Positions 6,282-54,247 of a stretch of DNA of 64,000 nt are shown piece after piece. The notes beneath the pieces were generated by a model. That model did not search any database and was not told where the DNA came from. It was given only the letters and a program-made list of their open reading frames with translations. Source of the DNA: Mytilus trossulus. Lineage: Eukaryota. A program made the position numbers and the translations under genes. The stretch covers positions 52,762,001 through 52,826,000 of the forward strand of contig NC_086375.1 of assembly GCF_036588685.1 (NCBI RefSeq), in the 5' to 3' direction. How positions within the stretch are numbered: the stretch's first letter is position 1; each line of letters starts with the position of its first letter.

Positions 6282-9200
6282 CTATACAGGTTGGTTCCTA
6301 CGATCAGCCTGTTCATCATCCTGTTGAATGTTACGTACTATAGGTGTGTTCAGTGGTTCTGTATCTTCAGCCCCTTGTTGTATTTGTCCCGGTTTTGTTG
6401 AACAACACCAAACATTATTCTCGGTCTTTCTAGGCATCCGAAGTTTAAGTTTACAGAAGAAATTTTCCTGTCGATATGTACTACAATTGTGTTTGGGTGG
6501 GTATTTGATTCTTACAAATGTTCTGTCAGTTTCTATAAATTCAAGTGGGCCTCCTCTTTTCGAAGCTTTTTCTACAACTGTAACAAGATTTGGACTGAAG
6601 TACTGTCTACATGCCACCAAACTTTCGAAAGTATTATTCGGATTAATTATTGAATATTCCGAAGGATAAATAATTACCAAACTCTTACTATCTTGTGCAA
6701 ATTCTTGTACCTTCTGCCATATAACTGTAAATAAAGCAAACTAGTTTATTCATTGATTGAATTTTAATATATTGTTTGAAGTGCAAAAAAACTTTAAATT
6801 TTCATACATAAAGGCAACAGTAGTATACCGCTGTTCGAAATTCATCAATCGGTTGAGAAAAAAAAATCCGGTTACAAACTAAAACTGAGGAAAACGCATC
6901 AAATATAGGGGGAGAACTACGACACAACAGAAACATAACATTTGAAATGTAACACACAGGAACTAACTATAACATAACAATAGTAATTTTTCTGACTTGT
7001 AACAGGACATTTAAAAAAAAATGTAAGTTGAACCTGATTTTGTAGCATACCAAACCACCCCTTTTTATGGCAATGTTAAATATAACGTTTAAATTACAAC
7101 ATTACATAACAGGACTACAATACAAATACATTGGATAGTCTATGGGCGTTAGTTATTGTGAAAGAACACAATTTATTTAAGAAAACAAATCTAAAAGCGA
7201 CATTCTAGCACTACAAATGTTCAAAAGTCTGAAAAGACCAACCGTTGTCTTGATTTGCGTGACAAATAACCTCGACATTCTCAAAAAGTATGACTTTTGT
7301 TCTAATTTATTTTTAACATGCATACACATTTTTTTTAAAGGTTTTCAGGTGAATAACAAGAAAAAGTAATCAGAAAAATTTATAAAACCAACTTATGGAT
7401 ACAACAATAGATATAACAATGTTTGTATCGACATGTTATTAAAAGCTGGAGAAACGGGATGTCACCAAGAAATCTCCAGAACTTTCAGGGATTTACTAAA
7501 TCACGTATTTTTCAATTCACTATACATTGATTGCTATTTTACGATTTTTTCCGTTGATCTTATGACATGATAATTCATTTCTCGGGAGCCCTGTAAAGTG
7601 ATATGAACAATTATTGCAAAAAACACACCCCAATTATGGGCGTTCGTGCGTTGTCAATAAAACTAACAACGTAGCGACCACCGATAATCTATAAGTAACA
7701 CATCAACAATTTTTCAACAATATAATCCGAAAAGGTTATAGTATGGGAACGAACCCTAAATGTGCATAAATACATTTGATCTTACCAGTTCCACCAGTGA
7801 TGCTTCCAGATATTTTGACATTATAACCGTCTGATTGTAACTTTTTTTGAATTCCTTCAGCAAGTTGTAAATCCTCGTCTTCATGAAGTATAAAGACATG
7901 GTAACTATTTGCACCTAATTTAGAAAAAAAGTATAAATAAAGGACTGCAGCATAATCATTATGACAGTTATACAACTCACAATTATTCTATACTAAACTG
8001 AAGCAAATTTAATAGATAAAACTATAACAACACCATACACCAAACAAATTAGGAGCATCCACAAAATAAATTGGAGGATAATATACAGATTGTAAGGAAC
8101 AGTTTGACTGCCATAACAAAAATGTAATTTCAACCGTTTGAAGGATCTGAATTAGATTGAAATTTATTTCTTCTAGTTGTCTGCCCATAGACTGTTATTT
8201 GTATTCCCGCGCTTCATGGGAAATAAACATTCGAAAAAGACGTGTTTCCCAGTTAAATATTTTTATCTTGCTTTGTCGACATGATATTATGTATCATAAT
8301 GTGCAATTTAAATCAGCACATGGCACTGTCGTGTGGGTATTGAATTTGAACTTTAGTTTGGTTTATTAGTCTTATGTGTACAGGGTTGGGTAGTCTATGG
8401 GCGTTAGTAACTATAGAGGAACAAAATCTTATTTATGAAAACAATTTTAAAAGCGACACTCTATCATTTCAAATGTCCAAAACTCTGAAAAGACCACTCG
8501 TTGTCTCGATTTGCATGACCAATAACTCGACATTCTCAAAAAGTATGACTTTTGTCCTAATTTTTCTCGAAATTTTTTCACTCATATCAAATTTGTATGA
8601 AACTCGGCATGCTCTCGACATTTTGAATACTGTTAAATCTCGACGTTAAAATTTGTCTGGGAATTTCCCGACCGGTTTTTGACATTCTTTTTTTGTTGCT
8701 CAGTATGTGTTGACCATGTTGACATATTCTGAGCATTTTGAATTGTGTCTTGATCTTACTTTTGGTCTCTTTTGTAGAGTTGTCTCATTTGCAATCATAC
8801 CACATCTTCTTTTTCTTTATCTTTGAAATAAAGCTTTAGTATGAAATAAATCTATAAGACATTGACTCTACATATTTGGTTCTTTTACCATCAAAATCTG
8901 TTAAAATTACTGGTCAATAAAACCTTTATTGGCTCATGCAGCAGCAAGGTTAATCAAATATTACAAATTATATAAAACATAGTTTTTGATAAAATAAGAA
9001 TTACCTTGGTCCATTAAATGCCAGTAAGGTATCCGTGAAAGGATAAACAGCTTTATTCTGAAGTAAAACACCGCAGTGAAAACAAATACCAGTGTCAATA
9101 TAACAACACATGGCGCAACTATTCCCTTTATTTCTTCCGCTGTTATCAAAGTCATTTTCGTTATTTCCACACCTAAAAATTACAAATACGAATTTTGTTT

Positions 9201-12200
9201 TTAACATTCAGAATTTTCTTAAATGAAATAATATTTATAGATTTTATATTTGAATATAATATCAATTAAATGTGGTATTTGTGAACAACGTGATATAGTA
9301 AGACAAGTACTTCTTTGCAACTCTAACATATGCATACCTTTTGTAAAACAAACCAATAACTTCTTTATGTTGTGTTTCATAAGATTTTGGTATGCATGAT
9401 ATTTTGAATTGAAATTAAAAAAAACCCGGACAAAACAACTTCAACAAAAAGAAAAAGGCTAAAAAATGAAGAAAAAAACAATCAATAACCATCGCACAAG
9501 AAACCAATAACTGAGCAACTTTTCCAACTATGTGAATACATAACGGACTTCCGGAAATCAAAAAGATCCAGTGTAGCATGGATAAAAGGCCTTTCTTTTC
9601 ATTACAATTTTCTACATAAGGAAATAAATGCCAGTACCAAAACAGGAATATGACAGATGTTTTCAATTGTTTCATGTTTGCTGAAGAATTTTTCATATTC
9701 AATTTTCCTTTGACTTCGGTATTTTTGCTATTTCACTTTTTAGCCCTTGTTGTTGTTTATGGCTATGCCATATATGTTCTATAACGGTTAATTTGATTAG
9801 GAAGAACATAATTCATCTTTTTACCACTTCAAACTCTTTGTGCAATAACTTCCTTGAAAGCAACAATCATCCATCAAGGATTTCCTGATAGGAAACATCA
9901 GGGATGAAATATTATGTGAAAGCAAGAAATATATATATACATTGTATATATAAAAAAAAACATATAAAAACATATATTTCTATATATTCAAAACATTTTT
10001 AAATGGTACGAGGCATGATTAACCTGTAAAAAAGGACAAGGTCCGCATTATTTTCGAGATTCTTTTTGTTTATCAGATATATACAAATTTGTGGGAAATC
10101 TAATTATAGTATCCACCGACAGCGTGAACGCGCAAGTGCAACTATTTGAAAAAAATATACAATTTTGGTTTTACTGTTTCAAAATTGATTTTGATTATGA
10201 TTTTTCCCCTTTAAATGATGTTTTACCCTAACATTTTTTTGCTTAATAAAATTATGATTATGGAAAAGATGTATACTACTGTTGCCTTTATTTACGGTTA
10301 GGATGGATTTCGTCCTCTTTAAATGTATCCAAAAACCTTGGTGACAAAGAACCCTATAACACTTATATTAAATCCTTTATGAACTGATTCTAACACAACA
10401 TAGAGACAAAAATACGTGCTTTACTTACTTGCTTCTTTGAGTTGGACAGTAAACGTTTTATCTCCATACGCCGAAGATACATAACAGGTAAAATTCTGTT
10501 TGAAATCTGTCTGTTCAATAGTTTTTATCACAAAAGTAGATACTTCAATGGTATGCTTTGACCTTACAAATACATTCAGATCAAGTAGACTCAAATTAAA
10601 ATACAATATGACTAAAATGTTATACAGAAGATTTACATATGCTAGTAGTTTTGTAAAATTTGCTACTATTCTTTTTTTTTTTTTTTTTTTTTTTTATCTT
10701 AAACATATCATGTGTTGTGGAAGTTTGTTTCCAACTGCAATGTTTTGATAACAAGTGCATTTTTTACACTATATTTTTTACGGTTAGACTGTTATTTGTT
10801 ATTTTTAAGAAAAAAAAATTGAAATGTGTCCTTTAACTTTGTAAACACTCTTAATTAAGGTTCTAATTTTATTTGCAAATCTCCTTTATATCTTTATTTA
10901 GTTTTCAGTAGAAATTGAAAAGGAAGGGGGAAGAATTGAAGCCTAATTATATTTATATGATTACATTACTATTACATTCCAATTACAGTACAATTACATT
11001 ACAATTTAATTACATTACATATGGGTTTTTTTATATCCACTGTACTATGAACGCATTTCTTAATAACACAAACGATGCAAACTACGCAATGTTTCTAACA
11101 TACGTTTGCAAAGTTTGCAAAGGCATCTACAGTTTGTTGTTCATCGTTTGTTGGTACAAACGCTACATTTGTTTCTAACTTCAACCTTGAATTTGAGTTA
11201 AAAAAAAAGCAGAGAACATTGGAACAATCTGCAAAAAGACAAACAATGCAGTGAAACCTTCGCCCTAGTTCCTATGGTATCATATAAACGTATCGAAATA
11301 TAAAGGAATAACTTGCTAAATCAAGCCAACAGTTTGGAGACTTATGAAAATATGGAAAAAAAATGGTGTAAAGTCTAGAATCCTTACTTTGTTGGCTGAA
11401 GGAACTTTATTTAATTATAACCGAGGAATAAGTCAGCTTACCAACAACATGTGCATGCATTATTTAAAGTTCAAACAGGGTCAGTAAACACTGATTAAAC
11501 GATGAATTTGTTTCTAGTTTTGTAGCGTTTAGCAAACGATAACAAACACCACACAGTTTTACAAAATTTAGGTTAGAAAGAAATGCATATATATATTTCA
11601 TTTTAATATTTAATCAATTATAGACGTACGTTTCAAAGGCATCTGTAGTTTGAGTTTACCAAACACAAGATGTGCTGTATGCGTCTTTATGAAAACCTAG
11701 TGCGTACTTTTTTCCTCGTTAATACATATTTTGTTAAGAAATTTAGGCATTATTTGTGAACAGAAAAGCAGTAATACACGAGGGGTGCCACATGTGGAGC
11801 AATATCTTCTTACCCTTTCGCAGCACCTGGTATCACCTTAGTTTGTGGTAGATTTCGTGCTGCTTTTCGTAGCCTTTAGTTTGCTATGTTGTGTATTGTG
11901 TGCTATCATTTGTCTGTTTGTCTTTTTCTGTTTTAGCTATGGCGTTGTCAGTTTATATCCGATATTTGAGTTTGACTGTCCCTCTGGAACTTTCCCCCCT
12001 CTTGCAAATATCAAAGTTTAAATAAATAAGATATAATAATACCTGTCTACATTTGTTACATTATATCTAGGAAATAATGTATCATCATCTAACGTGTCAT
12101 AATTTTCATCATACCAAGATACATCTTTCGCAGCATCAGAAGTGCACCCAAAATCACCGGTACAAGTAAAACTAACTGTTCCGCCGAGACGTCCATACTG

Positions 12201-15200: not shown

Positions 15201-15968
15201 GATAGTTGTTTATGGTTCTGTAATACTGCCACAATTTGGTGAGTAATCTTAACAGATATTATTTGTTAATTTGACAATAATTGTTATACAGCAGCAAAAA
15301 TCGTGAAAACAAACATTATACAACAGACAATAAAATTTGAACAGATAAAACAAAAAATCTGTCAAAGACACATAAAAACAGCTGTTGTAGTTGACAGTAA
15401 ATCCAATCAAGACAGACACAAAAATGTAACAATGAAAAACATTACAGGATCAAAAATTAAGACCTTTGTAAAAAAAAGCTTGGTACTTCGGTTAGCAGAT
15501 TTGATCATTAAAAAAATAAATAATGTGTTATGATTGTCAATGAGACAACTCTGCACAAAAGGCCAAATGCAATATAAATAAACATTCATAATACAGGCCA
15601 CCGTATGGCCTTAAAAAAACGAAAACTCATACCGCATTGTAAGTCCCCAAAATGACAAATGAACAATAATTCAAGGATAACATTCTGATTTATGTACAAA
15701 GTAATGACCTAAAACAAATATGACATACATCAACAAAGTCAAAGCTATTTATATGTATCTACAAAATAAAGATGGTGTCGCCAAATTTTATTATTTTTGC
15801 ATTTGCATGTGTCAAATAATTGTTATGTTTCAAATAGAAAACAAATTTCATTACATAATCATAAGCATGTGATGTAAGCTACTCACTTTTAAGTGTTGTA
15901 TTTCCCATCAAAACACAGGACGAAAACACGTTGTCAATTAAAACAAACAGCAATGTAGTGTAAATCAT
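6282..15968 (-). CDS. IL-1 receptor-like protein, paralogue A (signal peptide-Ig-Ig-TM-TIR), 7 coding exons, 491 aa
   Basis: Exons: 15968-15887 (MIYTTLLFVLIDNVFSSC...), 14187-13870 (Ig1: YCC, IIW, EGIYRC), 12244-12043 and 10562-10429 (Ig2: FTCTGDFGC, VSWY, TDFKQNFTC), 9172-9005 (TM), 7914-7786 (TIR box1-like YHVFILH) and 6724-6282 (SKSLVIIY...FFCKLKLRMP, stop TAG). All junctions are GT-AG. Total 1476 nt, open frame. Confidence 0.9.
6808..7125. repeat. High-copy SINE-like dispersed repeat (aaaggcaacagtagtataccgctgttc...)
   Basis: The same family recurs at ~27400-27730, 28030-28250, 42640-42780 and 63455-63625, and reversed at ~21590-21860. Confidence 0.7.
7131..8563. repeat. Pair of ~175 bp diverged direct repeats (7131-7308 and 8387-8563) flanking the first TIR exon of paralogue A
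   Basis: Both run from tagtctatgggcgttagt to ctcgacattctcaaaaagtatgacttttgt.ctaattt. Confidence 0.85.
14219..14262 (-). ncRNA. Minimal type I hammerhead ribozyme motif, intact core
   Basis: Minus strand reads GCAUCA-CUGAAGA-GACA UGUAU UGUC-GAAA-U GCGC A-UC-UGGUGC. Helix I is 6 bp, helix II is 4 bp, loop III is palindromic, and the cleavage triplet is AUC. Confidence 0.85.
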
Positions 15969-23552: not shown

Positions 23553-26500
23553 TTATGCAGATGATTCTTCTTCGCTATTTGATAAATTATGTTGTCCATT
23601 AAGTAATTCTGTATCTTCAGCACCTTGTTGTGTTTGGTCGTTATTTTTTGTACAACACACATTATTTCCTGTCCTTCTAGCCATCCGTAGTTTAAGTTTA
23701 CAGTAGAAATTTTCCTGCCGATATGTACTACAGTTTTGATTAGGTGGATATTTGATTCTAACTAACGTTTTGTCAGAGTCTATAACCTCTACTTTGTCGC
23801 CGGTTCTTTCAGCTTCGTCAACAACTGTAACGAGATTCGGACTGTAGTACTGTCTGACCCCCATGAAACTTTGGAAGTTGTTATTCGGACTATCTTCTGA
23901 ATATTCCGAAGGGTAAATGATAACCAAACTCTTACTTTCTTGTGCAAATTCTTGTGCTTTCTGCATCAGATCTGTTATAAAAAGCAAAAACTAGATAAGC
24001 AATACAGGTTGCATTTCTGTAAATATTGAAAATGCATTTTCCAATAAGAACTCCCTTTACAGGTAAAACTGTACTTCTTTTACTCTGAAGTTTTGAAAAA
24101 ATCGTATCCTTGAATGGAAAGTTCATATCCACCACTATTATTTTCAAAGGTCAAAATATAGGGCTGTGCGGCATATTTTCAACGTTTACATGCAAAGAAA
24201 TATTCACTACATTTCTTAACTACCCCATCCTCGACTGTAGGGTTACCACATATTTCAATATGAAGAATATGTTTATTTACTGGTAACATTCCCAAGTTAT
24301 GTCTCTATAAGATGCAACCTACAGATTAGAACTGGGAACCAGTTTGTAAACCAAATTAATTATCTATGAATATTCTATTTGAAAAACAGCTGTATATACA
24401 AAGTGCAACCTACAGATTTATTTAAACAAAGTTTTAAATTGTCTTAGCCGTATTTAGCACACATTTTCTATATTTTCGGTTTTCAATGCTTTTCACATTT
24501 GTTTTATTATACTTTGACTGATAAGTCTTGTGAAGTCGAAACATACGTTTGGCATACCGAATGGTAATCTGGGTGTCTTTGATTTTAGATCTAATCGATA
24601 CCAATGCTCGTGAGATTTTCATTCATGAGGTTTTCTACATAAGGAAATACTTGTACAAAGTCAGGAATATGACAGTTGTTATCCATTTGTTTTGAGTGTT
24701 TGATGTGTTTATGCTTTTGAGTAGGAACATTCCATCTTGTATTTTCCTTGGAGTTTATTTTTTTTTTACAAAATATATACGAATCAAAGATAACGAATCT
24801 AACCAGTTCCGCCTGTAATACTTCCAGATATTTTGACCGTATAAGAGTCTGATTGAAGTCTTTGTTGAATTCTTCTTGCTAGCTTTGTATCCTCATCTTC
24901 GTGGAGAATGAACACATGGTATTGTCGATCACCTAATTCCAATGATATAGAATAATGACTTTACCATATGATTATTACACGAATTTTTTTTTATGTTTTC
25001 TTATTTTCAACTAAAACAATTATTATAGAATTAAATAAAGACAACATTAATTATACATTGAGGTTCTGAAAAAAGAAATCACCAATTCACCAACATTCCA
25101 ACTGACTCCATTTTCAGAAAACGACATCTGTAACAAACATAAACTTTTAGCTACCGCTTTACAAGCAGAGCCAAATACAATGAAGTTCAAACTATGTATT
25201 GGCTCCCGATTCTACACAAAACACCTCACAAAAAAGATTTATTTCGTCTTCAAGCCATTGCTCCACTACTAAACTGTCTATTCTTCTTACCAGCACACTT
25301 GGTACAATTAAAAACCTTATAATAAATTGTTCAAATAAGGCCTTCGAAAATAGTGGAATTAATTATTTTTGAAGTGTCAAGAACTCGTTGGAAGTACTTG
25401 ATAAATTGCATGCTTATATTGGTGATTTTGAATCTGTTCAAAGTTTTGGTTTTTCTACCCTGTATACCACATTGCCTCACATTCTCATAAAGAAAAAAAT
25501 AACACATCTAATTAAATGGGCATTTAAAAAGTCAGAATGTGAATATATATGTTCAAACTCTTTTAGTTCATTTTTTAGTAGCAATAAACAAAAAAACTAT
25601 GTTAATTGGACTTGATTTGATACTATATATGCCCTTGAATTTTTACTCGATAACATTTTTGTTCGCTTTGGGGATTCCGTATATCGTCAGATTATCGGAA
25701 TTCCAATGGTGACTAACTGTGCACCACTTATTACGGACCTGTTTTGGTATTGCTACTAGTTACAATTTATGACAAAAATAAGCAAAGACCCATCGGAACA
25801 ACATCTGATAAACAAATTTAATAATACTTTTAGATATTTGGATGATATTTTGGCTCTCAATAATGACGACTTCAGTATGTATATTAAAGAAATTTATCAC
25901 GTTGAACTTACTTTAAATAAAGCTGATACTAACAATGACCACTGCCCTTTCCTCGATCTCGATATCTATATCACTAACGGAAAGCTGAATACTAAAATTT
26001 ATGATAAAAGAGATGATTTTTCATTTCCTATCGTTAATTATCCATTTTTAGATGGTGACGTTCCCTTGTCACCATCTTATGGTGTTTATATATCTCAACT
26101 TGTACGATTCGCTCGTGTATGTAACAATGTTTTAGATTTTAATGAGAGAAATTTAAGTATTACTGAAAAATTATTACACCAGGGTTTTCAATATCACAAA
26201 CTAGTCAAAACATATACTAAATTTTATCATCGGTATAAGGACAGCATTCGTAAACATAGCTCAACATGCAGACTTCATATACGTTCAGGTATTTCACATC
26301 CAATTTTTTATGGAAATATTCTTTCTAAAGCACAAAGGTGTCAGTTTTCACCTCAGAAACTAACAAAACCTTTGAATAGACTTATTAAGAAGAGATATAG
26401 TTGCGATACTGTTGTCAGGTCATTAAAGATTGCATATTTTGGCGTTAATATTGATTCACTTACAGGGTCTTTGCATCGGATCTAAACACATTTATTAAAA

Positions 26501-38928: not shown

Positions 38929-41900
38929 TTAGAATTTAGTCGAATAACTTTGTTCTGAAATGTGTTCATTATAAGTTGACTTGTTTGATCTACAACATGT
39001 GCAACATTTTATGTTTTGTGAACTCCTTCTCGGCATTCTAAGTTTAAGTTTACTATAGAAATTTGTCTCTTCGAAAAGCGAAAAATCCCCTCCATCCGGC
39101 CAAGTTATCTTCCTTAGGCCTACGTCTTCCAGAGCTTTTACACGTTTTTCAATTTCTCTCTGTTTTATGACTGTAATTAGACTTGGTTCGAAATAGTTTT
39201 GTGCACCAATTTCTCTTTGAAAAGTTGTACTACAAGCTTTTGTTGGATAAATAATTATTAAGCTACCACTATTCTGACAGAATTCGCCAAGTGTTCGTAT
39301 TATATCTGCAAATAAATATATATTTATATATAGACCATTTATATAATTTCAGTAAACTATCATCCTTTGTGAACATATATTTGAGCTTGGTCATTATTTA
39401 CAAACTACATACTACATACAGGACACAATCGTTAGAATATGCTTCAAATTAACACTTCGCGAGAGGATATAAAATCTACTTTGACGTAGTATTTTCTGGC
39501 ACTTCAAACATTATGTGACAGAAAAAAGAAAAGAAGAAAAGCAGTAAATATCAATTTAAAAAAACTTTTGTCTAATCAATCTGAATTGTTATTGCCATTT
39601 TGTTTTATCATTATTCTTACCTTGACCTCCTAGAACTTCAGAAGACATTATAACAGAATAAGCATCTTCTTCAAGTCTAGTCTTCAATACTTCTGCTATT
39701 TTTCTATCTTCAAATTCGTCATCGTGTAATATCAAGGCATGATAATCTTTGCTTCCTGAATATAAAAATTAGAAATGGCGGTAAGATTGGCAGTAAGACA
39801 ACTTTATCCATAAAAAACACAGGACAGAGATCTGACTTATACATATTATTCTAATTTCTAAGTGGTAATGTGCATCACATAAATACCTAACTAATATTAA
39901 ACAACGCCCGTTTTCGTTTATTTTATGTCGATTTCAACTATCTAAGTACTTTAAACCAGTTGCTGAACAAGCTGAAGCCCCACAAATCCATTGGTTGCTT
40001 GAGCATTTATACTAACAAAGCAAGCAAGCCAACCAAACCTTTCGACTTCAAGCATTAATAGAAAAGATCTAATATGTAGCATTACTGATTACGTTACAAA
40101 TAAGACAGGTTTTAATTGTATCGATGTTAAAACTGTCGTTAAAAATAAGATAACAGGAATCAACAACAAAAAACAGGAAAGTACAACATACCACATCAAC
40201 CACCAACGCTGACTCCTCTGAAAATAAGTAGACAGATAAACAAAGATAGACAACATCGAACACAATAAGCTAGCTATATATGTTGGTTGAATACTGCACC
40301 TGAGGAAAAAATCCTAAACAACATTCCACGTTTCTTGTAGTCTCATCATAAATAATTAAGGGTCATATGTGGGACAGCTGTTGAAGGCTGTTCATTGATC
40401 AAATGATGTTTGATTATTTGTGTCGTCGAGTTGCTGTCTCGTTGACTTATATCCCGCCTTTCATAAATTCATTTAGAAAAAAAAACAATCACAAAAAAAT
40501 GATAAACATCATACATGTGGTCTTTGATGTAACCTGCTTTATCAGCAGAGTGTGCATATACAATGCGAGTATTTTTTCAAATAATCTCTATCAACAACAT
40601 CGGTGATCACATGGTATGTAATATTTTCAGCGAAGCACACATGGTATGTGGTTAAAATTTGTGTGTGTGACATAACGATATGTTATAGAATCATTTTCAT
40701 AACAGCGTAAACAATTGCATTACCTATGTTGGTAATACCTTATTTTGATACTGAATTTACCTTTAACTTGTTTGTCATTGGCTATCGATAACGGTGATTT
40801 CACACTCAGTCTGTCTGAGATATTCCAATGTGGATTTATTAGAATGAAAGAGTATAGTACATGCAGTTGCATGTGATAAAAAGGGTAAATTTAATATTAA
40901 ACATTTAAATCAACACTCAATGTTTAGTCCTCTAACTGTTATTTATTCGTATTATTTGATTTAGGCGTTTAGTGACAAGTGAGCGTTGCATACCTTGGCA
41001 TATGTGAATTAAACAAAGGAAGCAGACAGTTCATGACAAAATTGTGTTTAGGTGATTGTGATGTGTTTGTACATCTTCCTTTACTGAACATTCTTGCTGC
41101 TCACAATTATCTCTATCTATAATGAACCTGTCCGTGTAGTTTCAGTGGAAAATGTAAGTAAAAATTTACAAATTTTATGAAAATTGTAAAAAATTGATTA
41201 TAAAGGACAATAACTTCTTAGGGGGTTAATTGACCATTTTGGTCATTTTGACTTTTTTTTAGTCTTAAATTGCTGTACATTATTGCTGTTTACAGTTTAT
41301 CTCTATCTATAATAATATTCAAGATAATAACCCAAAACAGCAAAAGTTCCTTAAAATTACCAATTTAGGGGCAGCAACCTAACAACGAGTTGTCCGATTT
41401 ATCTAAAAATGTCAGGGCAGATAGATCTTGACCAGATGAAAATTTTATCCCTGTCATATTTGCTCTAAATGCTTTGGTTTTTGAGTTATAAGCCAAAAAC
41501 TGCATTTTACCCCATGTTTTATCTTCTATTTTTAGCTGTAGTGGCCATCTTGGTTGGTTTGTCAGGTCACAAAACACAATTTTAAAACTAGATAGCCTAA
41601 TTATGATACTGGCTATGTTTGGTAAAATTTGGCCCAGTTGACTTATTTGTAAATCTTACTTTGCTGAACATTATTGCTGTTTACAGTTTATCTCCATCTA
41701 TAATGATATACAAGATAATAACCAAAAACAGTAAAATTTCCTTAAAATTACCAATTTAGGGGCAGCAACCCAACAATGGGTTGTCTGATTCATCTGAAAA
41801 TTTCAGGGCAGATAGATCTTCACCTGCTAAACAATTTAACCCCTGTCAGATTTGCTCTAAATGCATTGGTTTTTGAGTTATAAGCCAAAAACTGCATTTT

Positions 41901-44900
41901 ACCCTATGTTCTATTTTTAGCTGTAGCGGCCATCTTGGTTGATTTGCCCGGTCACAAAACCCAATTTTTAAACTAGATAGGCTTATAATGATTCTGGCTA
42001 TATTTGGTAAAATTTGGCCCAGTAGTTTCAGAGGAGAAGATTTTTGTAAAAGTTAACTAAAATTTACGAAAAATGGTAAAAAAATGACTATAAAGGGCAA
42101 TAACTCCTAAAGGGGTCAACTGACCATTTTGTTCATGTTGACTTATTTGTAAATCTTACTTTGCTGAACATTATTGCTGTTTACAGTTTATCTCCATCTA
42201 TAATAATATACAAGATAATAACCAAAAACAGTAAAATTTCCTTAAAATTACCAATTTAGGGGTAGCAACCCAACAATGGGTTTTCTGATTCATCTGAAAA
42301 TTTCAGGGCAGATAGATGTTGACCTGATGAACAATTTTACCCCATGTCAGATTTGCTCTAAATGCTTTGGTTTTTGAGTTATAAGCCAAAAACTGCATTT
42401 TACCCCTATGTTCTATTTTTAGCCATGGCGGCCATCTTGGTTGGTTGGCCGGGTAAAAAAACACAAATTTTAAACTAGATAAATCAATGATGATTGTGGC
42501 CAAGTTTGGTTTAATTTGGCCCAGTAGTTTCAGAGGAGAAGATTTTTGTAAAAGTTAACGCCGGACAACGGACGACGACGGACGACGGACGCCAAGTGAT
42601 GAGAAAAGCTCACTTGGTCCTTCGGGCCGGTGAGCTAAAAAAACAAATGCGGATTACACACTAAAACAGAGGGAAACGCATTAAATATCAGAGGAGAACA
42701 ACGACACAACATCAAAATGTAGCACACACAGAAAGGAACTTAGCATTAGACAAAATACGATGAGAATAACAAATATAACATTGTATGTAACATTTTTTTT
42801 TATTTACCAACATTTATCAGTGAGATGACCACATGGTATATACAACGTTTTCTACTTCATTAACTTTGCAAATTGGGAATTGTATGACTTTTGTAAATAG
42901 CATTTTCTGAATAAACCATGTTATATTTTCTACCTAACTAACCTTTATCAGATAGGTGACCACAAGGTATACGAGAAAGTATAAACAACTTTACTCTCGG
43001 CCGGAACAATAGAAGAAGAAGACCAATCACCATGAGGATTCCCGAGGCAATAATGGCAACTATAACACCAGCTGGTAGATGCATCTTTTTTGTAGTAGTA
43101 GTATTTGTGATTGAAACAGTTGTTCCTGTATGAAATTAAGACATTTCTAAATTATAAACAAAATACATACTAAACTAAGTATTTGTTTAGTTAAGGTCTT
43201 CTTTTTTTCCAAAAGGAAAGACCTTTCTTCATTTTTTATTTCTTTTTTCGCCGAACTTTAACAACGTTAGCTGTCTTTACCTTAAGACATGTTGCTTTCA
43301 GGTTCACACTTTGTAACAGAGTCACAAATACCTATCCGGTACTCACCCTATTAGTCAATGTTAGTCTGCACAATTCCAAAAAACCTTGTTATGAGGTGAA
43401 CACCGTAACAGTAAGAGGTAGAAAAAAAACGAAGGGTGGTTTATGTCAAGGAACAGAACCTGTTTTGTTAGATACATTTGGATAGAAAAGATTCAACGAC
43501 TTCTTGGTTGTATTGCGCCTATTTCGAAATCAATCGATGTCTGTTGGCCACTACAACTCAGAAACCGTGAGATGTAGCTGTTCCAGACCGTATGAATATT
43601 TGGAACGTATGCGTACTTTCTCAAAATACTCATACGGTCGAACGATACGAGTACGGTCTGACTAATATTAAAAAAGAATGTCATGTTTATAAGATACAAA
43701 TGCATTTATATAGCAGATCAACATAACTTAACTACCAAATTAATATAAAAAAGTTCAATTGTAATTGAAACAAATCTTTTTATATTTCAACTTTTTTAAA
43801 ATTCACGCTAATTAAATATGTTAATCTCTTGCATCTAGCATGTCGATCAGCAATACATTTATTGAATTATGATCAGTGAAATTGAAGACGTCGGAAGTAA
43901 ATATCATGTGGGAGGTCAATTGTTTTGGAATATTTAGCAACTATACCACAAAATGCAAATGCAAAGAAACATGCATGAACTGCATACATGAAAATGTAAA
44001 AAATATTACGTTACTTGAATTGTGTCACCTTGGGCGATATTACCATAGATTTACTATTAAACAAAATTTAATACTCAATTTCAAATGTTCGTTTGTTCAT
44101 TTTATCTTATTGTAATAGTTTAAACATATTTATTTATAGTGGATTGGGAAACAAGTTTTGTAACTTATATTAATCCCTTTCCACTTTGCGGGTGCGAGTG
44201 CTGCCTTGTACCGCCATTAGCCTACTCTTTTTCGAAATCTACAAGGGTGTCTTTAACGTGCAAGAGATATGGCTCTCTCTTAACACGGTGTAATATATAT
44301 AGGGGGTTGAATCCGCGTTTCCGGAAATACTGTGCAGTCCGTATATGATTTTGTTATATACATGTATGTAATTGTAATCACATGTACTGTCTCTTTTTCA
44401 TTTTGCAAGTGCCATTAAAGGACGTAATTTTATTAGCTGTTAATGTTTTGCCTCTCGCACCCCCATACAGGATCATTACATGGCGGAGGACCCGAAATAT
44501 TACTTCATTCAAAGGACTTTATTTGTGTAAACCTGAACTGAAATGATCTGAAATGAATTGAAAATTGTTTTCCCCATAATTTTCACTGAAGTGGGAAAAC
44601 CACGTGGGTGGTCAAATTTTTGTATGTGTGTCCATGCAGATTAAAATTTTCTTCAAGTTGCCGTATGAATCCCAGTTTTCTGTACGTGAGATTCATCTCA
44701 TTACAGGCGTAATATTTAACATGCACATTTATTTTTTTTTATCTGTACGTGAGATTTATCTCATTACAGTGTTGGTTTTTTTTCTGCGTTGATGTCGGCG
44801 CCGAAATATAGCAATTTAAATGATATGAGCGATGGTGAGTCTACTTTAAGTTTACACTCATTAGTTGAAACGGTCGACGAATTTACCGACGATTCACTTT

Positions 44901-47900: not shown

Positions 47901-50900
47901 CAACCATATTAAAATTTACCGAATAGATTTGACCTTGGCGTAAGTTGCAAATCATCCGTTATCGGTTTCTAAAAAGACCAAATTATCTTTAACTAATAAA
48001 CTTAAGATTCTAGACCAAAAGAGTTTTTTGCAATGACACTGGGACAATTGCCCTGACAAAGGTCACAAGGTTAGCGTCATGTCCAAGATAGCGAACTATG
48101 TTTTAAGCTGTTTAGTTTTGATCTCTCTTTAAGGATCATAACCCATGTTTACAGATTCTTAAAAGTAGCGAATGAAGTGTTTTACCATACTTTAAAGGTT
48201 GTGTTTTGACGCTTTTCAGAGCATTCTACGTCCAAGTCAACATATTTTTTACATTATTATAAAGGGAAAAACTCTCAATTATTCACGAACAATTGGCATT
48301 TAAATGTATTAATTGTTTTTTTGGTACAATTGGGGCGAACAAGAGAGCGATATAGTGTGTAGATAATTGCATTTTGATGAAAGCTGTAGATGTCTGTAGG
48401 TTTTTTTTTCAGCAATCATAAATGATACTTTTGTTCAAAATGAATATCCCCAAACCCTCGTATCTAAATTGTAAAAGAAAATCGTTGGGTTCGAATTTCT
48501 GTAAAACTATGGATTCATCTGAATGTTTGAAAAGAAAACTATGCTGACTGCTAGAAAAATGGTGAAATGACTTTTGTTTATTTCGGGTGTCTTTCAGTTC
48601 TTTTTTATACGCCCGTCAAAATTTTGACAGGACGTATTATGGTATACAAATGTCCGATGTCCGTCTGTCTGTCCGTCCGTCTGTCTGTCCGGCGTAAACA
48701 TGTCGCACCGTAACTTGAGAACGACTTATCCATTTTTTTTAGTTATATTAATCTTAATATCTGTATACTTTTTGGTGATGATTCAAAATTTTATTTTTGA
48801 GTTATTGAGTATTTTGTAAAAAAAAAAGGGGGGGGAGGTTTTTTTTACATGTCGCACCATATCTCAAAAACGATTAATGATTATTGCTTAAAACTTTACA
48901 AATGTCTTTGTTATATTAATCTAAAGATCTGTATACTTTTTGTTGATGATTCAAAATTTTTGAGTTATTGAGTATTTTGTTAAAAAATGGGAGGGTTTTT
49001 TTACATGTTGTGCCGTATCTCAAAAACAATTTATGATTATTGCTTAAATTTTACACACTTCTTTGTTGTATTAATCTAAAGATCTGTCTACTTTTTGGTG
49101 ATGATTCAAAATTCCATTTTTGAGTTATTAAGTATTTAGTTAAACAGAGGAGGGTTTTTTTACATGTCGCGCCGTATCTCAAAAATAATTTATGATTATT
49201 GCTTAAAACTTTACAAACTTCTTTGTTGTATTAATCTAAAGATCTGTATACTTTTTGGTTTTGATTCAAAATTTTATTTATAGTGATATTTAGTTTTTTG
49301 TAAAAAAAAACAGGGTTGGGGTTTCACATGTCCCGCCGTGTCTCAAAAACAATATATGGTTATTGCTTAATACTTTCTCAGAAACTATTTATGATTATTG
49401 CATAAAAATTCCACACATGACGTCGGGCGTATCATGCGCTCATGGCGCAGCTGTTTATTTAATTATATTACTATTTACTTGTTTTCTATATTATTTAACA
49501 GTACTATACTTTTTGCATCGGATATTTATATAACAAATTGTAAATATAAAGATATATACTACCACCTTGTAATTGTTACGAGAAAACAAATGTACACAAA
49601 CACAAGTATTAAGAATCAAGTTTTATACTTACGTTTCTTTAAAATATGAACTTCAAAATACTGATAATCAGAAGTGGATGATACAATACAGATGAAAGTT
49701 TGGTTAAAATCACTCTCATTGGTGTCTGTGATAGTTAGATTGACTTCAACGTATGTTTCACCGTATCTGATAAATAAAAAAATAAGAATGTGTCCCCAGC
49801 ACACTGGTGCCCCATCAGCACTATCATTTTCTATGTTCAGTAGGCAGTGAAAATGGGGGAAATCTCTAAATTGGCAATAAAAATTAGAAAGATCATATCA
49901 TGGGAAACATGTGTACTAAGTTTCAAGTTGAATGGACTTCAAATTCCTCAAATACTACCTCGACCAAAAACTTAAACCAAAACTATAACCTGAAGTGGGA
50001 CAGACGGACGAACGAACGGACGAACGAACAGACGAACGAATAGACAAACCAACAACCATTTTTTTCTTCGAGATAAAGAACATAATATTGACTTGCAGAC
50101 AATATGAATATTTGTAATTTTGAGGATAAAATAAATCAGAATATAACTATCAAGGTTTCCTTTACAATCTGAAGAGTTAAAAAGCGCATATAACACAATT
50201 CATAAAAAAACCGGAGAAGATAGATTGAAATATATAGTCAGAAAGTTACTCATTCTGGTGTGTTTAATTTTATTTATCACAAAACAAATCATATTTATAA
50301 CTTTCAAACCATAAAAATGAGTAGAATCAAAATAACTTACTTTTCTGCGTTACTGGTGGAGTATCTAGAGTTATTTATAAAATCATAGTTCTCATCATAC
50401 CACCCCACTTGTCTGAATTTGTCAATTGTACAACCAAAATCTCCAGCACAAGAAAATGTAACAGTGTCACCAATACTAGCATACTTGTCTTGTGGGGCTA
50501 TATATAGTGGTGTTTCTCTTTCTGTACAAGCTGGAGTTAAAATAGACAATTAAGATTATTTGATTGTTACATGTAATGCAAAGAGGTCAGGCCAAATCTT
50601 TATGAATTTGTTTTATTTACCATCTGACTACTTGGCTCCTTAGGATATGCACTCTCTCTATTGGTTTGATTTCAACATTTAGCAGTGACGTCCGATTATT
50701 ATTAGTGTGATTTTCATTACTGAAAGCTTTTGCAAGTTCAAACCTAAATAGTTAGGTGAAGAATGCTATCAACTGATTTTTATAGTTCGTTCTTATGTTG
50801 TACTGTTATGCCATTGTCCCAGGTTAGGTGAGGGTTAGTATCACGCTAACATGTTTAACCCCGCCACATTAATTATTTATGTGCCTGTCCCAAGTCAGGA

Positions 50901-53900: not shown

Positions 53901-54247
53901 CAGCACAGACCAGATGCTGGATGTATAGGACCGAAAATAAACTCATCTTAGATACAAGGCTTCAAATTTTGCGTTTCGTTTACAAAAGACTCATAGATCG
54001 AATCTGAAAGTTAAAAAGGCCAAATAAAATACGAATTTGAAGAGCAGTAAGTGTAATAATAGGTGTAAATATTTGTGTTTTCTATCGGTTTGAATTAAAA
54101 TGGTCATTAAAAACATGTTACCCTTTTATAGTGCAGTGATTCCATACCTTCCTGGACTGAGTAATGTTTGTTGATACAGGTACCACCAATAAAGACCGGT
54201 AAAATAAGTAAAACACCAACCACTACTTTACCAGCAGAAAGTTCCAT
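38929..54247 (-). CDS. IL-1 receptor-like protein, paralogue C (most divergent; signal peptide-Ig-Ig-TM-TIR), 7 coding exons, 477 aa
   Basis: Exons: 54247-54148 (MELSAGKVVVGVLLILPVFIGGTC...), 52034-51720 (ADFDYAQFGK..IDCC..ILW..DAGIYRC), 50530-50341 and 49766-49633 (FSCAGDFGC..VGWY..SDFNQTFIC), 43125-42943 (TM, ...RVKLFILSRIPCGH), 39755-39621 (YHALILHDDE...EVLGGQ) and 39305-38929 (SGSLIIIYP...ITWP...FYSKLKLRMP...STKF*). GT-AG, 1434 nt open. Most of these exons are missing from the ORF track. Confidence 0.88.
41010..42640 (-). mobile_element. Non-autonomous Helentron-like element with ~3 internal copies of a ~450-500 bp unit
   Basis: Minus-strand start tttttagctcacc...gtgagctttt followed by a (cgtc/cgt)n microsatellite. 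Internal units recur near 41200, 41640 and 42090. The left boundary is approximate. Confidence 0.7.
44289..47336 (+). mobile_element. Young non-autonomous LTR retrotransposon (gag only, Ty3/Gypsy-like), 3048 bp
   Basis: LTRs 44289-44480 and 47145-47336 (192 bp, TGT...ACA, one mismatch seen). 4-bp TSD ACGG. PBS-like TGGCGGAGGA at 44481 and purine tract at 47138-47144. No pol remnant recognised. Confidence 0.95.
44789..45841 (+). CDS. Retrotransposon Gag-like protein, probably C-terminally truncated
   Basis: Capsid-like motifs KFRG...FLREF, LTGPALTWFNSL...SWEKLIELFKRKY, LEDFY..L and KFIQGL. Lies between the LTRs. The last ~25 codons run into repeat sequence. Confidence 0.85.
   Translation: MMSAPKYSNLNDMSDGESTLSLHSLVETVDEFTDDSLLSSYLLAPTRPSQNHELDQSLHLLAPTRPSQTNKLDRSMPILTPQISLVNRLHQNNLTYNTSACYTTSTPRLEHTSIPRIVHTAVMEKLAPCRKFRGYSHENGLVFLREFDSFATLHKMPYEYQRRIAAFHLQLTGPALTWFNSLTFNDKSSWEKLIELFKRKYVNLDWQSPTIMLENEVFEHIKLSPGQALEDFYCQLVEKAQLLHKADHEILTKFIQGLAEKLAFFVRTGNHKDSNGALSSAKMGEAYGYRLHDEISVSAIKQQITPKAVAEQNPSVVHELKSQIQDNCQCLTRMFILNLFVREIYLMTIY
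48603..49456 (+). mobile_element. Non-autonomous Helentron-like element (HINE) with a ~155-165 bp internal tandem array
   Basis: 5' ttttatacgcccgtc and (tgtc/cgtc)n microsatellite. Units start near 48699, 48847, 49003, 49162 and 49327. 3' inverted cgggcgtat followed by hairpin tgcgc-tcatg-gcgca and a T-rich flank. Confidence 0.8.
49780..50055 (-). mobile_element. Truncated HINE-like repeat with (gaac/gac)n microsatellite next to the exon 4 acceptor of paralogue C
   Basis: ggacagacggacgaacgaacggacgaacgaacagacg tract plus a body typical of these elements. Confidence 0.5.
52112..52155 (-). ncRNA. Minimal type I hammerhead ribozyme motif, intact core, within a ~330 bp repeat (52078-52407)
   Basis: Minus strand reads GCGUCA-CUGAUGA-GUCU UAUGU AGAC-GAAA-C GCGC G-UC-UGGCGU. 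Canonical core, GUC cleavage triplet, palindromic loop III. Confidence 0.88.
52563..53497. mobile_element. ~935 bp non-autonomous DNA transposon with long imperfect TIRs
   Basis: Left tagtccagtcaa...aattgcaacagaa...gaaaaagtcccataaaatct is mirrored by right agattttatgggactttt...ttctgttgcaatt...ttgacttgacta. Confidence 0.75.

What the first reader, a model, noticed from the sequence alone, without database searches (positions are those of the whole stretch)
6282..54247. Tandem cluster of three intact two-Ig IL-1-receptor-like genes in an invertebrate
Seen: three same-strand paralogues, each with 7 coding exons, identical phases and open frames, encoding signal-Ig-Ig-TM-TIR. A and B are close, and their differences in exon 3 are largely synonymous. 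C is more distant. Established: vertebrate IL-1R family members are mostly three-Ig receptors, several in a tandem cluster, acting as receptor plus accessory-chain pairs. Ig-TIR proteins are known from some invertebrates, but no IL-1 cytokine is established there. Inference: this may be an uncharacterised receptor/co-receptor/decoy set for an unknown molluscan ligand.
Basis: partly seen in the sequence, partly recalled or inferred. Interest (0 to 1): 0.85.

Follow-up and report, generated by a model that had tools for sequence, protein, structure and literature searches.

The report
Mussel two-Ig, TIR-tailed receptor gene trio
Three neighbouring, intact mussel (Mytilus trossulus) genes encode membrane receptors with two antibody-like outer domains and a very divergent TIR signalling domain; they are real and under selection, but they belong to an already recognised class of invertebrate "IL-1-receptor-like" genes and their ligand and function are unknown.

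Summary
On the minus strand lie three 7-exon genes: A 15968-6282, B 35512-23553 and C 54247-38929. All splice sites are GT-AG, intron phases are identical (1,1,2,1,1,1), and the frames are open for 491, 480 and 477 aa.

- **Public models.** Models A and B are letter-for-letter the RefSeq proteins of Mytilus trossulus LOC134711810 and LOC134711811. C matches two isoforms of LOC134711812. All are named "uncharacterized".
- **Domains.** Full-length A passes Pfam Ig thresholds. The cytoplasmic part stays below every TIR threshold, but it aligns end to end with mussel TLR TIR domains (hhalign E 0.002). Predicted models match only TIR structures there (Z 11.5-13.8).
- **Evolution.** A/B dN/dS is 0.31. 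Clades A, B and C are each conserved in five Mytilus species. Database searches found this family only in Mytilus and unnamed transcript assemblies. The genome holds only these three copies.

My verdict is a mytilid-restricted Ig-Ig-TM-TIR receptor family, a new member of the known invertebrate "IL-1R-like" architecture. Orthology to vertebrate IL-1R and the receptor/co-receptor/decoy idea remain untested, and the canonical BB-loop motif is absent. A 2025 preprint reports IL-1-like cytokines in bivalves, so a ligand candidate now exists. RNA-read checks could not be run. The scan had noted a different Mytilus-only receptor cluster elsewhere in this genome.

The parts
15887..15968 (-). Gene A exon 1: ATG and hydrophobic N-terminus (inferred signal peptide)
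   Evidence: joined model = P0021
13870..14187 (-). Gene A exon 2: Ig-like domain 1
   Evidence: Pfam V-set/Ig_3/I-set on the exon alone, sub-threshold; above threshold on full-length P0021
12043..12244 (-). Gene A exon 3: first half of Ig-like domain 2
10429..10562 (-). Gene A exon 4: second half of Ig-like domain 2
   Evidence: I-set C-terminal half E 0.08
9005..9172 (-). Gene A exon 5: transmembrane helix and conserved juxtamembrane motif
   Evidence: Kyte-Doolittle peak 2.81; helix 257-292 in the model
7786..7914 (-). Gene A exon 6: start of the TIR fold (strand A, helix A, strand B, BB-loop)
   Evidence: TIR_2 positions 1-29, E 0.015
6282..6724 (-). Gene A exon 7: rest of the TIR fold, C-terminal tail and stop
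   Evidence: no Pfam hit alone; TIR fold in models; hhalign
35428..35512 (-). Gene B exon 1: ATG and N-terminal hydrophobic stretch
   Evidence: joined model = P0025
33562..33852 (-). Gene B exon 2: Ig-like domain 1
32389..32599 (-). Gene B exon 3: Ig-like domain 2, first half
29524..29663 (-). Gene B exon 4: Ig-like domain 2, second half
28492..28659 (-). Gene B exon 5: transmembrane helix and juxtamembrane motif
24804..24932 (-). Gene B exon 6: start of the TIR fold
23553..23971 (-). Gene B exon 7: rest of the TIR fold, tail and stop
   Evidence: model of the 84%-identical orthologue P0011 hits TIR structures at Z 12.4-13.8
54148..54247 (-). Gene C exon 1: ATG and hydrophobic signal-like N-terminus
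   Evidence: Kyte-Doolittle 2.33; present in P0042
51720..52034 (-). Gene C exon 2: Ig-like domain 1
50341..50530 (-). Gene C exon 3: Ig-like domain 2, first half
49633..49766 (-). Gene C exon 4: Ig-like domain 2, second half
42943..43125 (-). Gene C exon 5: transmembrane helix; skipped in RefSeq isoform X2
39621..39755 (-). Gene C exon 6: start of the TIR fold
38929..39305 (-). Gene C exon 7: rest of the TIR fold, tail and stop

Best explanation
These are three functional paralogues, LOC134711810, -11 and -12 of Mytilus trossulus. They belong to a small family found so far only in Mytilus-type mussels.

Each encodes a type I membrane protein with these parts:
- a signal-like N-terminus;
- two Ig-like domains, the first in one exon and the second split over two;
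- one transmembrane helix followed by a strongly conserved juxtamembrane motif;
- a highly divergent TIR-fold domain split over two exons;
- a 40-60-residue tail.

Shown here: the gene structures, the intact frames, the Ig domains, the TIR fold (on predicted models), purifying selection, and conservation of all three clades across the genus.

Inferred: they act as cell-surface receptors. A ligand bound by the two Ig domains would bring the cytoplasmic TIR domains of two chains together. The paired TIRs would then scaffold TIR-containing adaptors, with MyD88-type adaptors the obvious candidates. Such receptors would be expected to signal towards NF-kB-type responses. Whether the output is activating or damping cannot be told from sequence, because the BB-loop motif that canonical signalling TIRs use is replaced.

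The architecture is that of the known invertebrate 'IL-1R-like' (Ig-TIR) class. Common descent with vertebrate IL-1R genes is possible but not demonstrated.
For: - **Gene models.**. A and B are identical to RefSeq proteins, and C to two RefSeq isoforms.
- **Transcription in other species.** Orthologues and relatives occur as full-length proteins on 1.6-2.1 kb Logan contigs. These are too short to hold the introns, so they are spliced transcripts in related mussels.
- **Ig domains.** On full-length A, Ig_3 scores 33.3 bits (cut-off 30), I-set 27.9 (23.7) and V-set 26.2 (26). Two-Ig structural matches reach Z 12-15.
- **TM.** One hydrophobic 19-mer peak of 2.8-3.05 per protein, and a long helix in both models.
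- **TIR.** TIR_2 is hit in every member tested, E 7e-6 to 0.15, always starting at model position 1 or 2 (8 in P0008). hhalign of the family profile against eight TLR TIR domains of the same genome aligns 135 columns end to end, E 0.0023, with boxes 1 and 3 in register. The model of the B orthologue (TIR region pLDDT 70-87) matches only TIR structures over residues 288-432: TIR-1, TIR-STING, IL-1RAcPb, MyD88, SARM1, IL-18Rbeta, Hydra TRR-2 and TIRAP, Z 11.3-13.8, rmsd about 3 A. The model of A itself matches zebrafish SIGIRR TIR at Z 11.5. ESM Atlas neighbours are TIR clusters, 0.87-0.89.
- **Selection.** A-B dN/dS is 0.31 with dS 0.62; ectodomain 0.25, cytoplasmic part 0.30.
- **Age.** Clades A, B and C each have 99-100% support, with members from five Mytilus species.
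- **Copy number.** A six-frame search of the 1.3 Gb genome found matches only inside this window.
Against: - Transcription of these very genes therefore rests on RefSeq models and on transcripts of relatives.
- The TIR call is below the curated threshold of both Pfam TIR models in every member.
- A profile of the exon-7 part finds no TIR chain in the PDB by sequence.
- The structural evidence comes from predicted models of middling confidence: mean pLDDT 64 and 61, with the TIR region of A only 55-78.
- The BB-loop 'RD..PG' motif is absent.
- No ligand, partner or expression data exist.
- The signal peptide was judged by eye, not by a predictor.
Confidence: 0.6

Rival explanations
1. They are true homologues of the vertebrate IL-1 receptor family and form the mussel IL-1 receptor system. 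One clade binds an IL-1-like beta-trefoil cytokine (IL-1anc) and another serves as accessory chain. Splice forms act as soluble or signalling-dead decoys.
For: - The family profile gives single collinear stretches over both Ig domains to D2-D3 of IL-18RAcP (E 2e-7 to 2e-6), IL1RAPL1 (0.002-0.004), ST2 and IL-1RAcP.
- The best Foldseek hit is the IL1RAPL1 ectodomain.
- The best VIA hit in both models is the IL-1R-like poxvirus interferon decoy receptor, Z 14.8-15.1.
- IL-1RAcPb, IL-18Rbeta and SIGIRR TIRs are among the tied TIR matches.
- The box 3 region ends in a '...MP' pattern that I recall from IL-1R-family TIRs. This is memory, not tested.
- RefSeq lists a TM-less isoform of C, and M. californianus a TIR-truncated one.
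- Multiple IL-1anc genes are reported in bivalves, and two-Ig receptors are described as the invertebrate norm (bioRxiv 10.1101/2025.07.17.662885).
Against: - Generic IgSF proteins (CEA, Robo, contactin, titin, RAGE, Dscam) score as well or better.
- TIR matches to the IL-1R family tie with SARM1, TIR-STING and MyD88, all within 1 Z unit.
- Pfam prefers TIR_2 over the TIR model that covers IL-1R.
- The family was found only in Mytilus-type mussels, which fits lineage-specific invention as well as fast divergence.
- No PDZ or trefoil-type gene was seen among open frames of 70 aa or more within 60 kb either side.
- The only Pfam IL1 match in the genome is weak, holds two stops and lies on another chromosome.
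- No pairing test was run.
Confidence: 0.15
2. They are damping receptors of the SIGIRR/DIGIRR kind. They have few Ig domains, an atypical TIR that cannot signal by itself, and a C-terminal extension. They would work by sequestering TIR adaptors or TLRs.
For: - Two Ig domains, as in fish DIGIRR (PMC9020223).
- The BB-loop motif is replaced in all members.
- A 40-60-residue tail follows the TIR.
- The only TIR structure in the top 50 for the model of A is zebrafish SIGIRR, Z 11.5.
- This genome has at least 150 canonical TIR loci, mostly TLR-sized open frames, which could need regulators.
Against: - The SIGIRR match ties with other TIRs in the better model.
- The tails are not conserved between clades.
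- No functional data exist.
- Loss of the motif does not by itself prove loss of signalling.
Confidence: 0.12
3. They are IgSF adhesion or synapse-organising receptors with a non-immune role, in the manner of IL1RAPL1. The TIR would serve as a protein-docking module.
For: - The IL1RAPL1 ectodomain is the top Foldseek hit.
- Many neural IgSF proteins (Robo, contactin, NCAM, DIP, Dscam) are strong matches.
- The immediate neighbours are not immune genes: a GPCR, Timeless, CAP-Gly and astacin/MAM.
Against: Matches to neural IgSF proteins are what any tandem I-set pair gives. There are no expression data either way.
Confidence: 0.1
4. The TIR domains are NAD-cleaving enzymes of the SARM1/TIR-STING type rather than scaffolds.
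For: C. elegans TIR-1, oyster TIR-STING and SARM1 are among the best structural matches, Z 13.0-13.8. The Pfam model that matches is TIR_2.
Against: The column that aligns with the conserved glutamate of the helix-C motif (hhalign) is Glu in clade A but Gln in clades B and C. The Z values tie with non-enzymatic TIRs.
Confidence: 0.03
5. The models are chance open frames or decaying pseudogenes.
For: None found.
Against: - 21 exons carry canonical splice sites, conserved phases and no stops.
- dN/dS is 0.31.
- There are orthologues in five species.
- The models are identical to RefSeq proteins.
Confidence: 0.01

Closest known systems
Invertebrate 'IL-1R-like' / Ig-TIR receptors, defined by architecture: sea urchin (Hibino 2006 as cited), cnidarian ILR-like, sponge IgTIR, and the putative IL-1Rs of Fontenla-Iglesias et al. 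2025
   Same: Type I membrane protein with extracellular Ig folds, one TM helix and a cytoplasmic TIR fold. The preprint gives two Ig domains as the usual invertebrate number.
   Different: This family was found only in Mytilus-type mussels. Its TIR is so divergent that both Pfam models miss their thresholds, and the BB-loop motif is replaced. No link to an IL-1anc gene was seen within 60 kb.
Vertebrate IL-1 receptor family (IL-1R1, IL-1RAcP, IL-18Ralpha/beta, ST2, IL1RAPL1)
   Same: The domain order is the same. The ectodomain aligns collinearly with D2-D3. The genes are tandemly clustered. TIR fold matches to IL-1RAcPb and IL-18Rbeta reach Z 12.6-13.1.
   Different: There are two rather than three Ig domains. 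There is no 'RD..PG' BB-loop. The Pfam TIR model (PF01582) gives no hit or 13 bits against a cut-off of 21.3. Orthology has not been tested, and ligand and adaptors are unknown.
SIGIRR (IL-1R8) and teleost DIGIRR
   Same: A reduced number of Ig domains (DIGIRR has two), an atypical TIR, and a C-terminal extension. Zebrafish SIGIRR TIR is the TIR hit for the model of A.
   Different: No evidence of an inhibitory role. The sequence relationship is not detectable. The tail is not conserved between clades.
Poxvirus soluble interferon alpha/beta receptor (OPG204/B18R class; ectromelia C12R, PDB 3oq3)
   Same: It is the best structural match of the two-Ig unit in both models, Z 14.8-15.1 to its domains 2-3. 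UniRef names several M. galloprovincialis family members after it automatically.
   Different: The viral protein is secreted, has three Ig domains and has no TM or TIR. The name on the mussel proteins is an automatic transfer, not a function.
Mussel Toll-like receptors of the same genome
   Same: They share the TIR fold. The profile-profile alignment covers the whole domain.
   Different: TLRs have LRR ectodomains, mostly single long open frames, and canonical TIRs scoring 54-80 bits on PF01582. The three genes here have Ig ectodomains, split TIRs and no PF01582 hit.

Membership tests
Invertebrate Ig-TIR ('IL-1R-like') receptors, defined by architecture | Extracellular Ig fold(s) | tested here: met
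   On full-length A (P0021), Ig_3 scores 33.3 bits (cut-off 30), I-set 27.9 (23.7) and V-set 26.2 (26). Two Ig sandwiches appear in both models, with Z 12-15 to tandem Ig structures.
Invertebrate Ig-TIR ('IL-1R-like') receptors, defined by architecture | Single transmembrane helix between the Ig part and the TIR, with a signal peptide at the N-terminus | tested here: met
   There is one hydrophobic peak of 2.8-3.05 at residues about 260-285, and a helix in the models. The N-terminal hydrophobic stretch is clear in C and weaker in A and B. No signal-peptide predictor was on hand, so cleavage is inferred.
Invertebrate Ig-TIR ('IL-1R-like') receptors, defined by architecture | Cytoplasmic TIR fold | tested here: met
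   Predicted models only. The B orthologue gives Z 11.3-13.8, rmsd about 3 A, over 121-140 residues, to TIR structures exclusively. A gives Z 11.5 to the SIGIRR TIR. hhalign against mussel TLR TIRs gives E 0.0023 over 135 columns.
Pfam TIR (PF01582) / TIR_2 (PF13676) | Score at or above the curated gathering threshold | tested here: not met
   TIR_2 scores 13-27 bits against a cut-off of 28 in all eleven members tested. PF01582 is absent or scores 12.9-13.5 against 21.3. The database's precomputed Pfam marks list PF13676 for two members.
Vertebrate IL-1 receptor family | Three Ig-like domains (one in SIGIRR, two in DIGIRR) | tested here: not met
   There are two Ig domains in all members. They align with D2-D3 of IL-18RAcP, IL1RAPL1, ST2 and IL-1RAcP.
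Vertebrate IL-1 receptor family | TIR box 2 / BB-loop motif (RD..PG with the conserved proline) | tested here: not met
   In the family alignment, and in the hhalign register with TLR TIRs, the motif is replaced by a Ser/Gly-rich loop ending in Gly-Gly. Neither Arg-Asp nor Pro is present.
Vertebrate IL-1 receptor family | TIR boxes 1 and 3 | tested here: inconclusive
   Box 1 is recognisable: an aromatic residue, then His in place of Asp, then a hydrophobic strand. Box 3 keeps Phe plus an aromatic residue in register with the TLR 'FW'. The resemblance of the following residues to IL-1R-type box 3 rests on memory only.
Vertebrate IL-1 receptor family | Phylogenetic grouping of the TIR and ectodomain with IL-1R members rather than other TIR proteins | not tested
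   No vertebrate IL-1R, MyD88 or SARM sequences could be obtained by reference. Structural Z values tie across TIR subfamilies.
Vertebrate IL-1 receptor family | Binds a beta-trefoil IL-1-family cytokine and signals through MyD88/IRAK | not testable with these tools
   This needs binding and signalling assays. Candidate ligands (IL-1anc) are reported in bivalves.
SEFIR domain receptors (IL-17R type) | SEFIR domain instead of TIR | tested here: not met
   No SEFIR model is listed for any member at the E-value limits used, E 1 and E 0.1. No IL-17R or Act1 SEFIR structure is among the top 50 matches.
NAD-cleaving TIR enzymes (SARM1, TIR-STING, plant and bacterial TIRs) | Conserved catalytic glutamate in the helix-C motif | tested here: not met
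   The aligned column is Glu in clade A and in the two unnamed lineages, but Gln in clades B and C. That this column is the catalytic one is from established knowledge of SARM1 and plant TIRs, not tested here.

The most novel reading that the evidence does not exclude
The trio is the receptor side of a molluscan IL-1 axis. The older clade C and the younger A/B clades would act as binding chain and accessory chain for the PDZ-trefoil 'IL-1anc' cytokines recently reported in bivalves. The annotated TM-less isoform of C would act as a secreted decoy. This would be the first assignable cytokine-receptor pair of the IL-1 type in a protostome.
Probability: 0.12. Interest if true: 0.75.

Novelty: new member of a known kind. 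Interest (0 to 1): 0.42.

Why it matters
Mussels carry one of the largest TIR repertoires known; this genome has at least 150 canonical TIR loci. Almost none of these genes has an assigned function.

This trio stands out in several ways. It has an Ig rather than LRR ectodomain and a TIR at the edge of recognisability. It has held a fixed three-gene arrangement since before the Mytilus species split, and it is under purifying selection.

A 2025 preprint proposes ancestral IL-1 cytokines in bivalves. These genes are therefore concrete, clonable candidates for testing whether an IL-1-like ligand-receptor axis exists in molluscs. If it does not, the family is still a clean example of how far a TIR domain can drift while keeping its fold.

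Tried and rejected
**Steps that gave nothing**
- Exon-by-exon Pfam gave only sub-threshold Ig and TIR_2 hits, and nothing for exon 7.
- Sequence profiles against PDB chains found no TIR. The full-length profiles were dominated by Ig hits, apart from designed alpha/beta proteins matching the first beta-alpha-beta. The exon-7 profile found only one chance hit.
- The exhaustive phmmer with exon 7 of A found 9 clusters among 1.84 billion representatives. Two word-indexed searches found 7 and 12 clusters. All were Mytilus or unnamed, so no bridge to other Ig-TIR families came up.
- Rfam at gathering thresholds found nothing in the window.
- Search for a linked ligand gene: open frames of 70 aa or more within 60 kb each side showed Timeless, an SR-rich frame, CAP-Gly, astacin/MAM and transposon genes, but no PDZ or trefoil candidate. 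Small exons would have been missed.
- Pfam IL1 against the whole genome gave one weak hit with two stops on another chromosome. I treat it as probably chance.
- Literature searches for a description of this family in mussels found none.

**Steps not run**
- Complex prediction: I do not claim that A, B and C bind each other. IL-1R-type chains pair through the ligand, and the tool's stated false-pass rate for neighbours is about as high as my prior.
- A TIR tree with vertebrate IL-1R, TLR, MyD88 and SARM: those sequences could not be brought in by reference.

**Handling of the joined models**
No joined spliced model was handed to any search or fold tool. Exons were searched by reference. Full-length work used the public proteins P0021, P0025, P0042 and P0043, which equal the models.

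**Readings rejected**
Pseudogenes or chance frames, a SEFIR domain, and NADase (for B and C).

Full report
**What is there**

The window is AT-rich eukaryotic DNA, 29-37% G+C. A six-frame comparison of three sub-regions showed seven collinear blocks of protein similarity on the minus strand between 5.5-22 kb and 22-39.5 kb. The Ig, TM and TIR blocks recurred at 38.9-54.3 kb.

I read the minus strand around each block and placed splice sites. I then checked them numerically.
- Gene A runs 15968-6282, gene B 35512-23553 and gene C 54247-38929.
- Each has 7 coding exons, and every intron is GT...AG.
- Intron phases are 1,1,2,1,1,1 in all three, and there are no internal stops.
- The products are 491, 480 and 477 aa.

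**Independent confirmation of the models**

Exons were searched by reference. An exhaustive phmmer with exon 7 of A and two word-indexed searches returned public proteins. Scripts then compared these with the models.
- A equals P0021, XP_063428777.1, LOC134711810 of Mytilus trossulus.
- B equals P0025, XP_063428778.1, LOC134711811.
- C without exon 5 equals isoform X2 of LOC134711812 (P0042), and C from residue 107 equals isoform X3 (P0043). Between them these cover every exon and junction of my model.

So the window is M. trossulus, chromosome-scale contig C3, 52.76-52.83 Mb. The three genes are already annotated, as "uncharacterized protein".

There is indirect evidence of transcription. Relatives occur as full-length proteins on Logan contigs of 1.6-2.1 kb. 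The genomic genes span 10-15 kb, so those contigs can only be spliced transcripts. RefSeq also lists three isoforms for C.

**Domains**

Exon by exon, Pfam gave only sub-threshold Ig hits, TIR_2 at E 0.015 for exon 6, and nothing for exon 7.

On full-length A, Ig_3, I-set and V-set all pass their curated cut-offs. TIR_2 reaches 21.7 bits against a cut-off of 28. Across eleven family members TIR_2 is always present (E 7e-6 to 0.15), always starts at model position 1 or 2 (8 in P0008), and never passes the threshold. PF01582, the model that covers IL-1R, TLR and MyD88, is absent or about 13 bits.

Each protein has one strong hydrophobic segment.

I used three further tests for the TIR.
1. **Profile against profile.** I built a profile of eight canonical TLR TIR domains from this same genome. 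hhalign against the family profile gave one alignment of 135 columns covering the whole domain, E 0.0023, probability 12.7%. Box 1, the strand-C region and box 3 were in register.
2. **Model of the B orthologue.** This is an AlphaFold2 model of the M. coruscus orthologue of B, 84% identical, with mean pLDDT 64 and a TIR region of 70-87. It has a five-strand, five-helix alternating fold at 288-432. In an all-against-48,161-chain structural search that part matched TIR structures only: C. elegans TIR-1 13.8, oyster TIR-STING 13.3, IL-1RAcPb 13.1, MyD88 13.0, SARM1 13.0, IL-18Rbeta 12.6 and Hydra TRR-2 12.6, at rmsd about 3 A over 124-136 residues.
3. **Model of A itself.** It is weaker, with mean pLDDT 61 and a TIR region of 55-78. 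It still matched the zebrafish SIGIRR TIR at Z 11.5, rmsd 3.0 A, over 128 of 146 residues.

ESM Atlas neighbours of residues 300-450 are TIR clusters at 0.87-0.89, which is a lead only.

No SEFIR model or SEFIR structure appeared.

Against the TIR call, sequence profiles find no TIR chain in the PDB. My conclusion is that the fold is TIR on predicted structure and profile-profile alignment, but the sequence lies outside the curated family boundaries.

**Motifs**

The family alignment and the hhalign register show the following.
- Box 1 is recognisable.
- The BB-loop 'RD..PG' is replaced by a Ser/Gly-rich loop without Pro.
- Box 3 keeps Phe plus an aromatic residue.
- The stretch just after the TM helix is almost invariant across all clades.
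- The helix-C glutamate column is Glu in A but Gln in B and C. This argues against a conserved NADase function.

**Ectodomain**

Two Ig sandwiches appear in both models. The best structural match in both is domains 2-3 of the ectromelia interferon decoy receptor, an IL-1R-like fold, at Z 14.8 and 15.1. IL1RAPL1, IL-18Rbeta, IL-1RAcP, IL-18Ralpha and ST2 are also listed, alongside DIP, Dscam, contactin, NCAM and titin.

Foldseek ranks IL1RAPL1 first, then RAGE.

By sequence profile, the IL-1R-family ectodomains are the hits that align as one stretch across both domains up to the membrane. They are IL-18RAcP at E 2e-7 to 2e-6, IL1RAPL1, ST2 and IL-1RAcP. Generic IgSF proteins have equal or better total scores.

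This is suggestive of kinship with D2-D3 of IL-1R-type receptors. It is not proof.

**Evolution**

- Nei-Gojobori estimates for A against B give dS 0.62, dN 0.19 and dN/dS 0.31. The ectodomain is 0.25, the cytoplasmic part 0.30 and the signal exon about 1. A/B against C is saturated at synonymous sites.
- In exon 3, the first 46 codons differ at 8 synonymous and 4 non-synonymous codons. The flanking introns are unalignable.
- A maximum-likelihood tree of 19 family proteins recovers clades A, B and C at 99-100% support. Each has members from M. trossulus, M. edulis, M. galloprovincialis and M. californianus; clades A and B also hold a named M. coruscus protein, and clade C an unnamed Logan protein (P0041). 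Two unnamed transcript lineages branch on the A+B side of the tree, outside the A+B clade, with their order unresolved. The trio therefore predates the radiation of the genus, and C split off first.
- A six-frame search of the 1.3 Gb genome with A found 16 matches, all inside this window.
- Searches of 1.84 billion representatives and of 5.8 billion clusters found only Mytilus proteins and unnamed Logan/ENA fragments. The latter search is limited to relatives sharing 5-residue words and to 0.55-1.75 times the query length.

**Context**

- Downstream of A lies a single-exon rhodopsin-type GPCR.
- Within 60 kb on either side are Timeless, an SR-rich frame, a CAP-Gly exon, an astacin/MAM protease and transposon genes.
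- Nothing resembling a PDZ-trefoil gene was seen among frames of 70 aa or more.
- The one Pfam IL1 match in the genome is weak, interrupted by two stops and on another chromosome.

**Comparison with what is known**

Reviews state that IL-1R-like genes (Ig, TM, TIR) exist in Cnidaria, Protostomia and Deuterostomia (PMC9020223).

A 2025 preprint (10.1101/2025.07.17.662885) makes three relevant statements:
- it reports 'IL-1anc' PDZ-trefoil proteins across Eumetazoa, with several genes in each bivalve examined;
- it notes that invertebrate putative IL-1Rs have two rather than three Ig domains;
- it finds IL-1/IL-1R linkage in some deuterostomes.

I found no paper describing this mussel family. 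UniRef labels some M. galloprovincialis members automatically as 'Soluble interferon alpha/beta receptor OPG204'.

**Verdict**

These are genuine, selected, two-Ig TIR-fold receptors of IL-1R-like architecture. Membership in the IL-1R family proper fails two tested features, the BB-loop motif and the Pfam TIR threshold, and its phylogeny is untested. The receptor/co-receptor/decoy scheme is conjecture. The only hints towards it are an annotated TM-less isoform of C and a TIR-truncated isoform in M. californianus.

I did not run complex prediction. I make no binding claim, and the expected information was low.

I rate this as a new member of a known kind, of moderate interest. Its main value is that it provides concrete candidates for testing a molluscan IL-1-type axis.

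Noticed in passing
window 14219-14262 (-), 52112-52155 (-), 30797-30840 (-); repeat unit 52063-52397: There are near-threshold full-length matches to the type I hammerhead ribozyme model RF00163: 31.2, 33.0 and 24.5 bits against a gathering score of 34. They lie on the sense strand in intron 1 of A, intron 1 of C and intron 3 of B. The C and B copies sit in a roughly 335-bp repeat. That repeat gave 1989 first-look candidates genome-wide, and it forms tandem arrays with a 355-bp period at 96-98% identity, for example on C12 at 58.71-58.72 Mb. The motif therefore belongs to a dispersed or satellite repeat, not to these genes' splice sites.
   Followed up: partly
window 42943-43125 (gene C exon 5): RefSeq isoform X2 of LOC134711812 skips the TM exon in frame. 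It would give a signal-Ig-Ig-TIR protein with no membrane anchor. Exons 2, 5 and 6 are phase 1-1 in all three genes, so skipping any of them keeps the frame. M. californianus LOC127737722 isoform X2 ends after exon 6, leaving a truncated TIR. Whether these are functional forms or splicing noise is unknown.
   Followed up: partly
window 2317-3420 (+): A single-exon open frame of 367 aa is a rhodopsin-family GPCR (7tm_1, 128.9 bits). It lies 2.9 kb downstream of gene A on the other strand.
   Followed up: partly
window 44789-45841 (+), inside intron 4 of gene C: A 350-aa open frame carries a retrotransposon gag domain (30.7 bits) on the opposite strand, in the 6.5-kb intron between the Ig2 and TM exons.
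   Followed up: partly
window 26915-27200 and 55697-55981; 25769-26485 (+), 56700-57400 (-): Reverse-transcriptase-like open frames and an inverted pair of about 80% similar stretches link intron 5 of gene B with the region upstream of gene C. They look like copies of one retroelement family. Another note of the scan treats the 55.5-58.1 kb element.
   Followed up: no
G000:C1:60767352-60767489 (L011:1501-1638): This is the only match of the Pfam IL1 model in the genome: 24 bits, or 25.6 with neighbours, against a cut-off of 25, E 0.02. It contains one TGA and one TAA and lies on a different chromosome from the cluster. It is probably chance or a relic.
   Followed up: partly
G000, whole genome: At least 150 loci match the canonical TIR model PF01582 at 54-80 bits. 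Most lie in long single open frames of 700-900 aa, as expected of Toll-like receptors, and many are in tandem groups, for example on C9 at 65.1-65.3 Mb.
   Followed up: no
L013:2772-3107, L014:970-4176, L015:1897-2157, L016:207-3287: The neighbours within 60 kb are a Timeless PAB-domain exon, a 1069-aa Ser/Arg-rich open frame with no Pfam match, a CAP-Gly exon, and an astacin protease with a MAM domain.
   Followed up: partly
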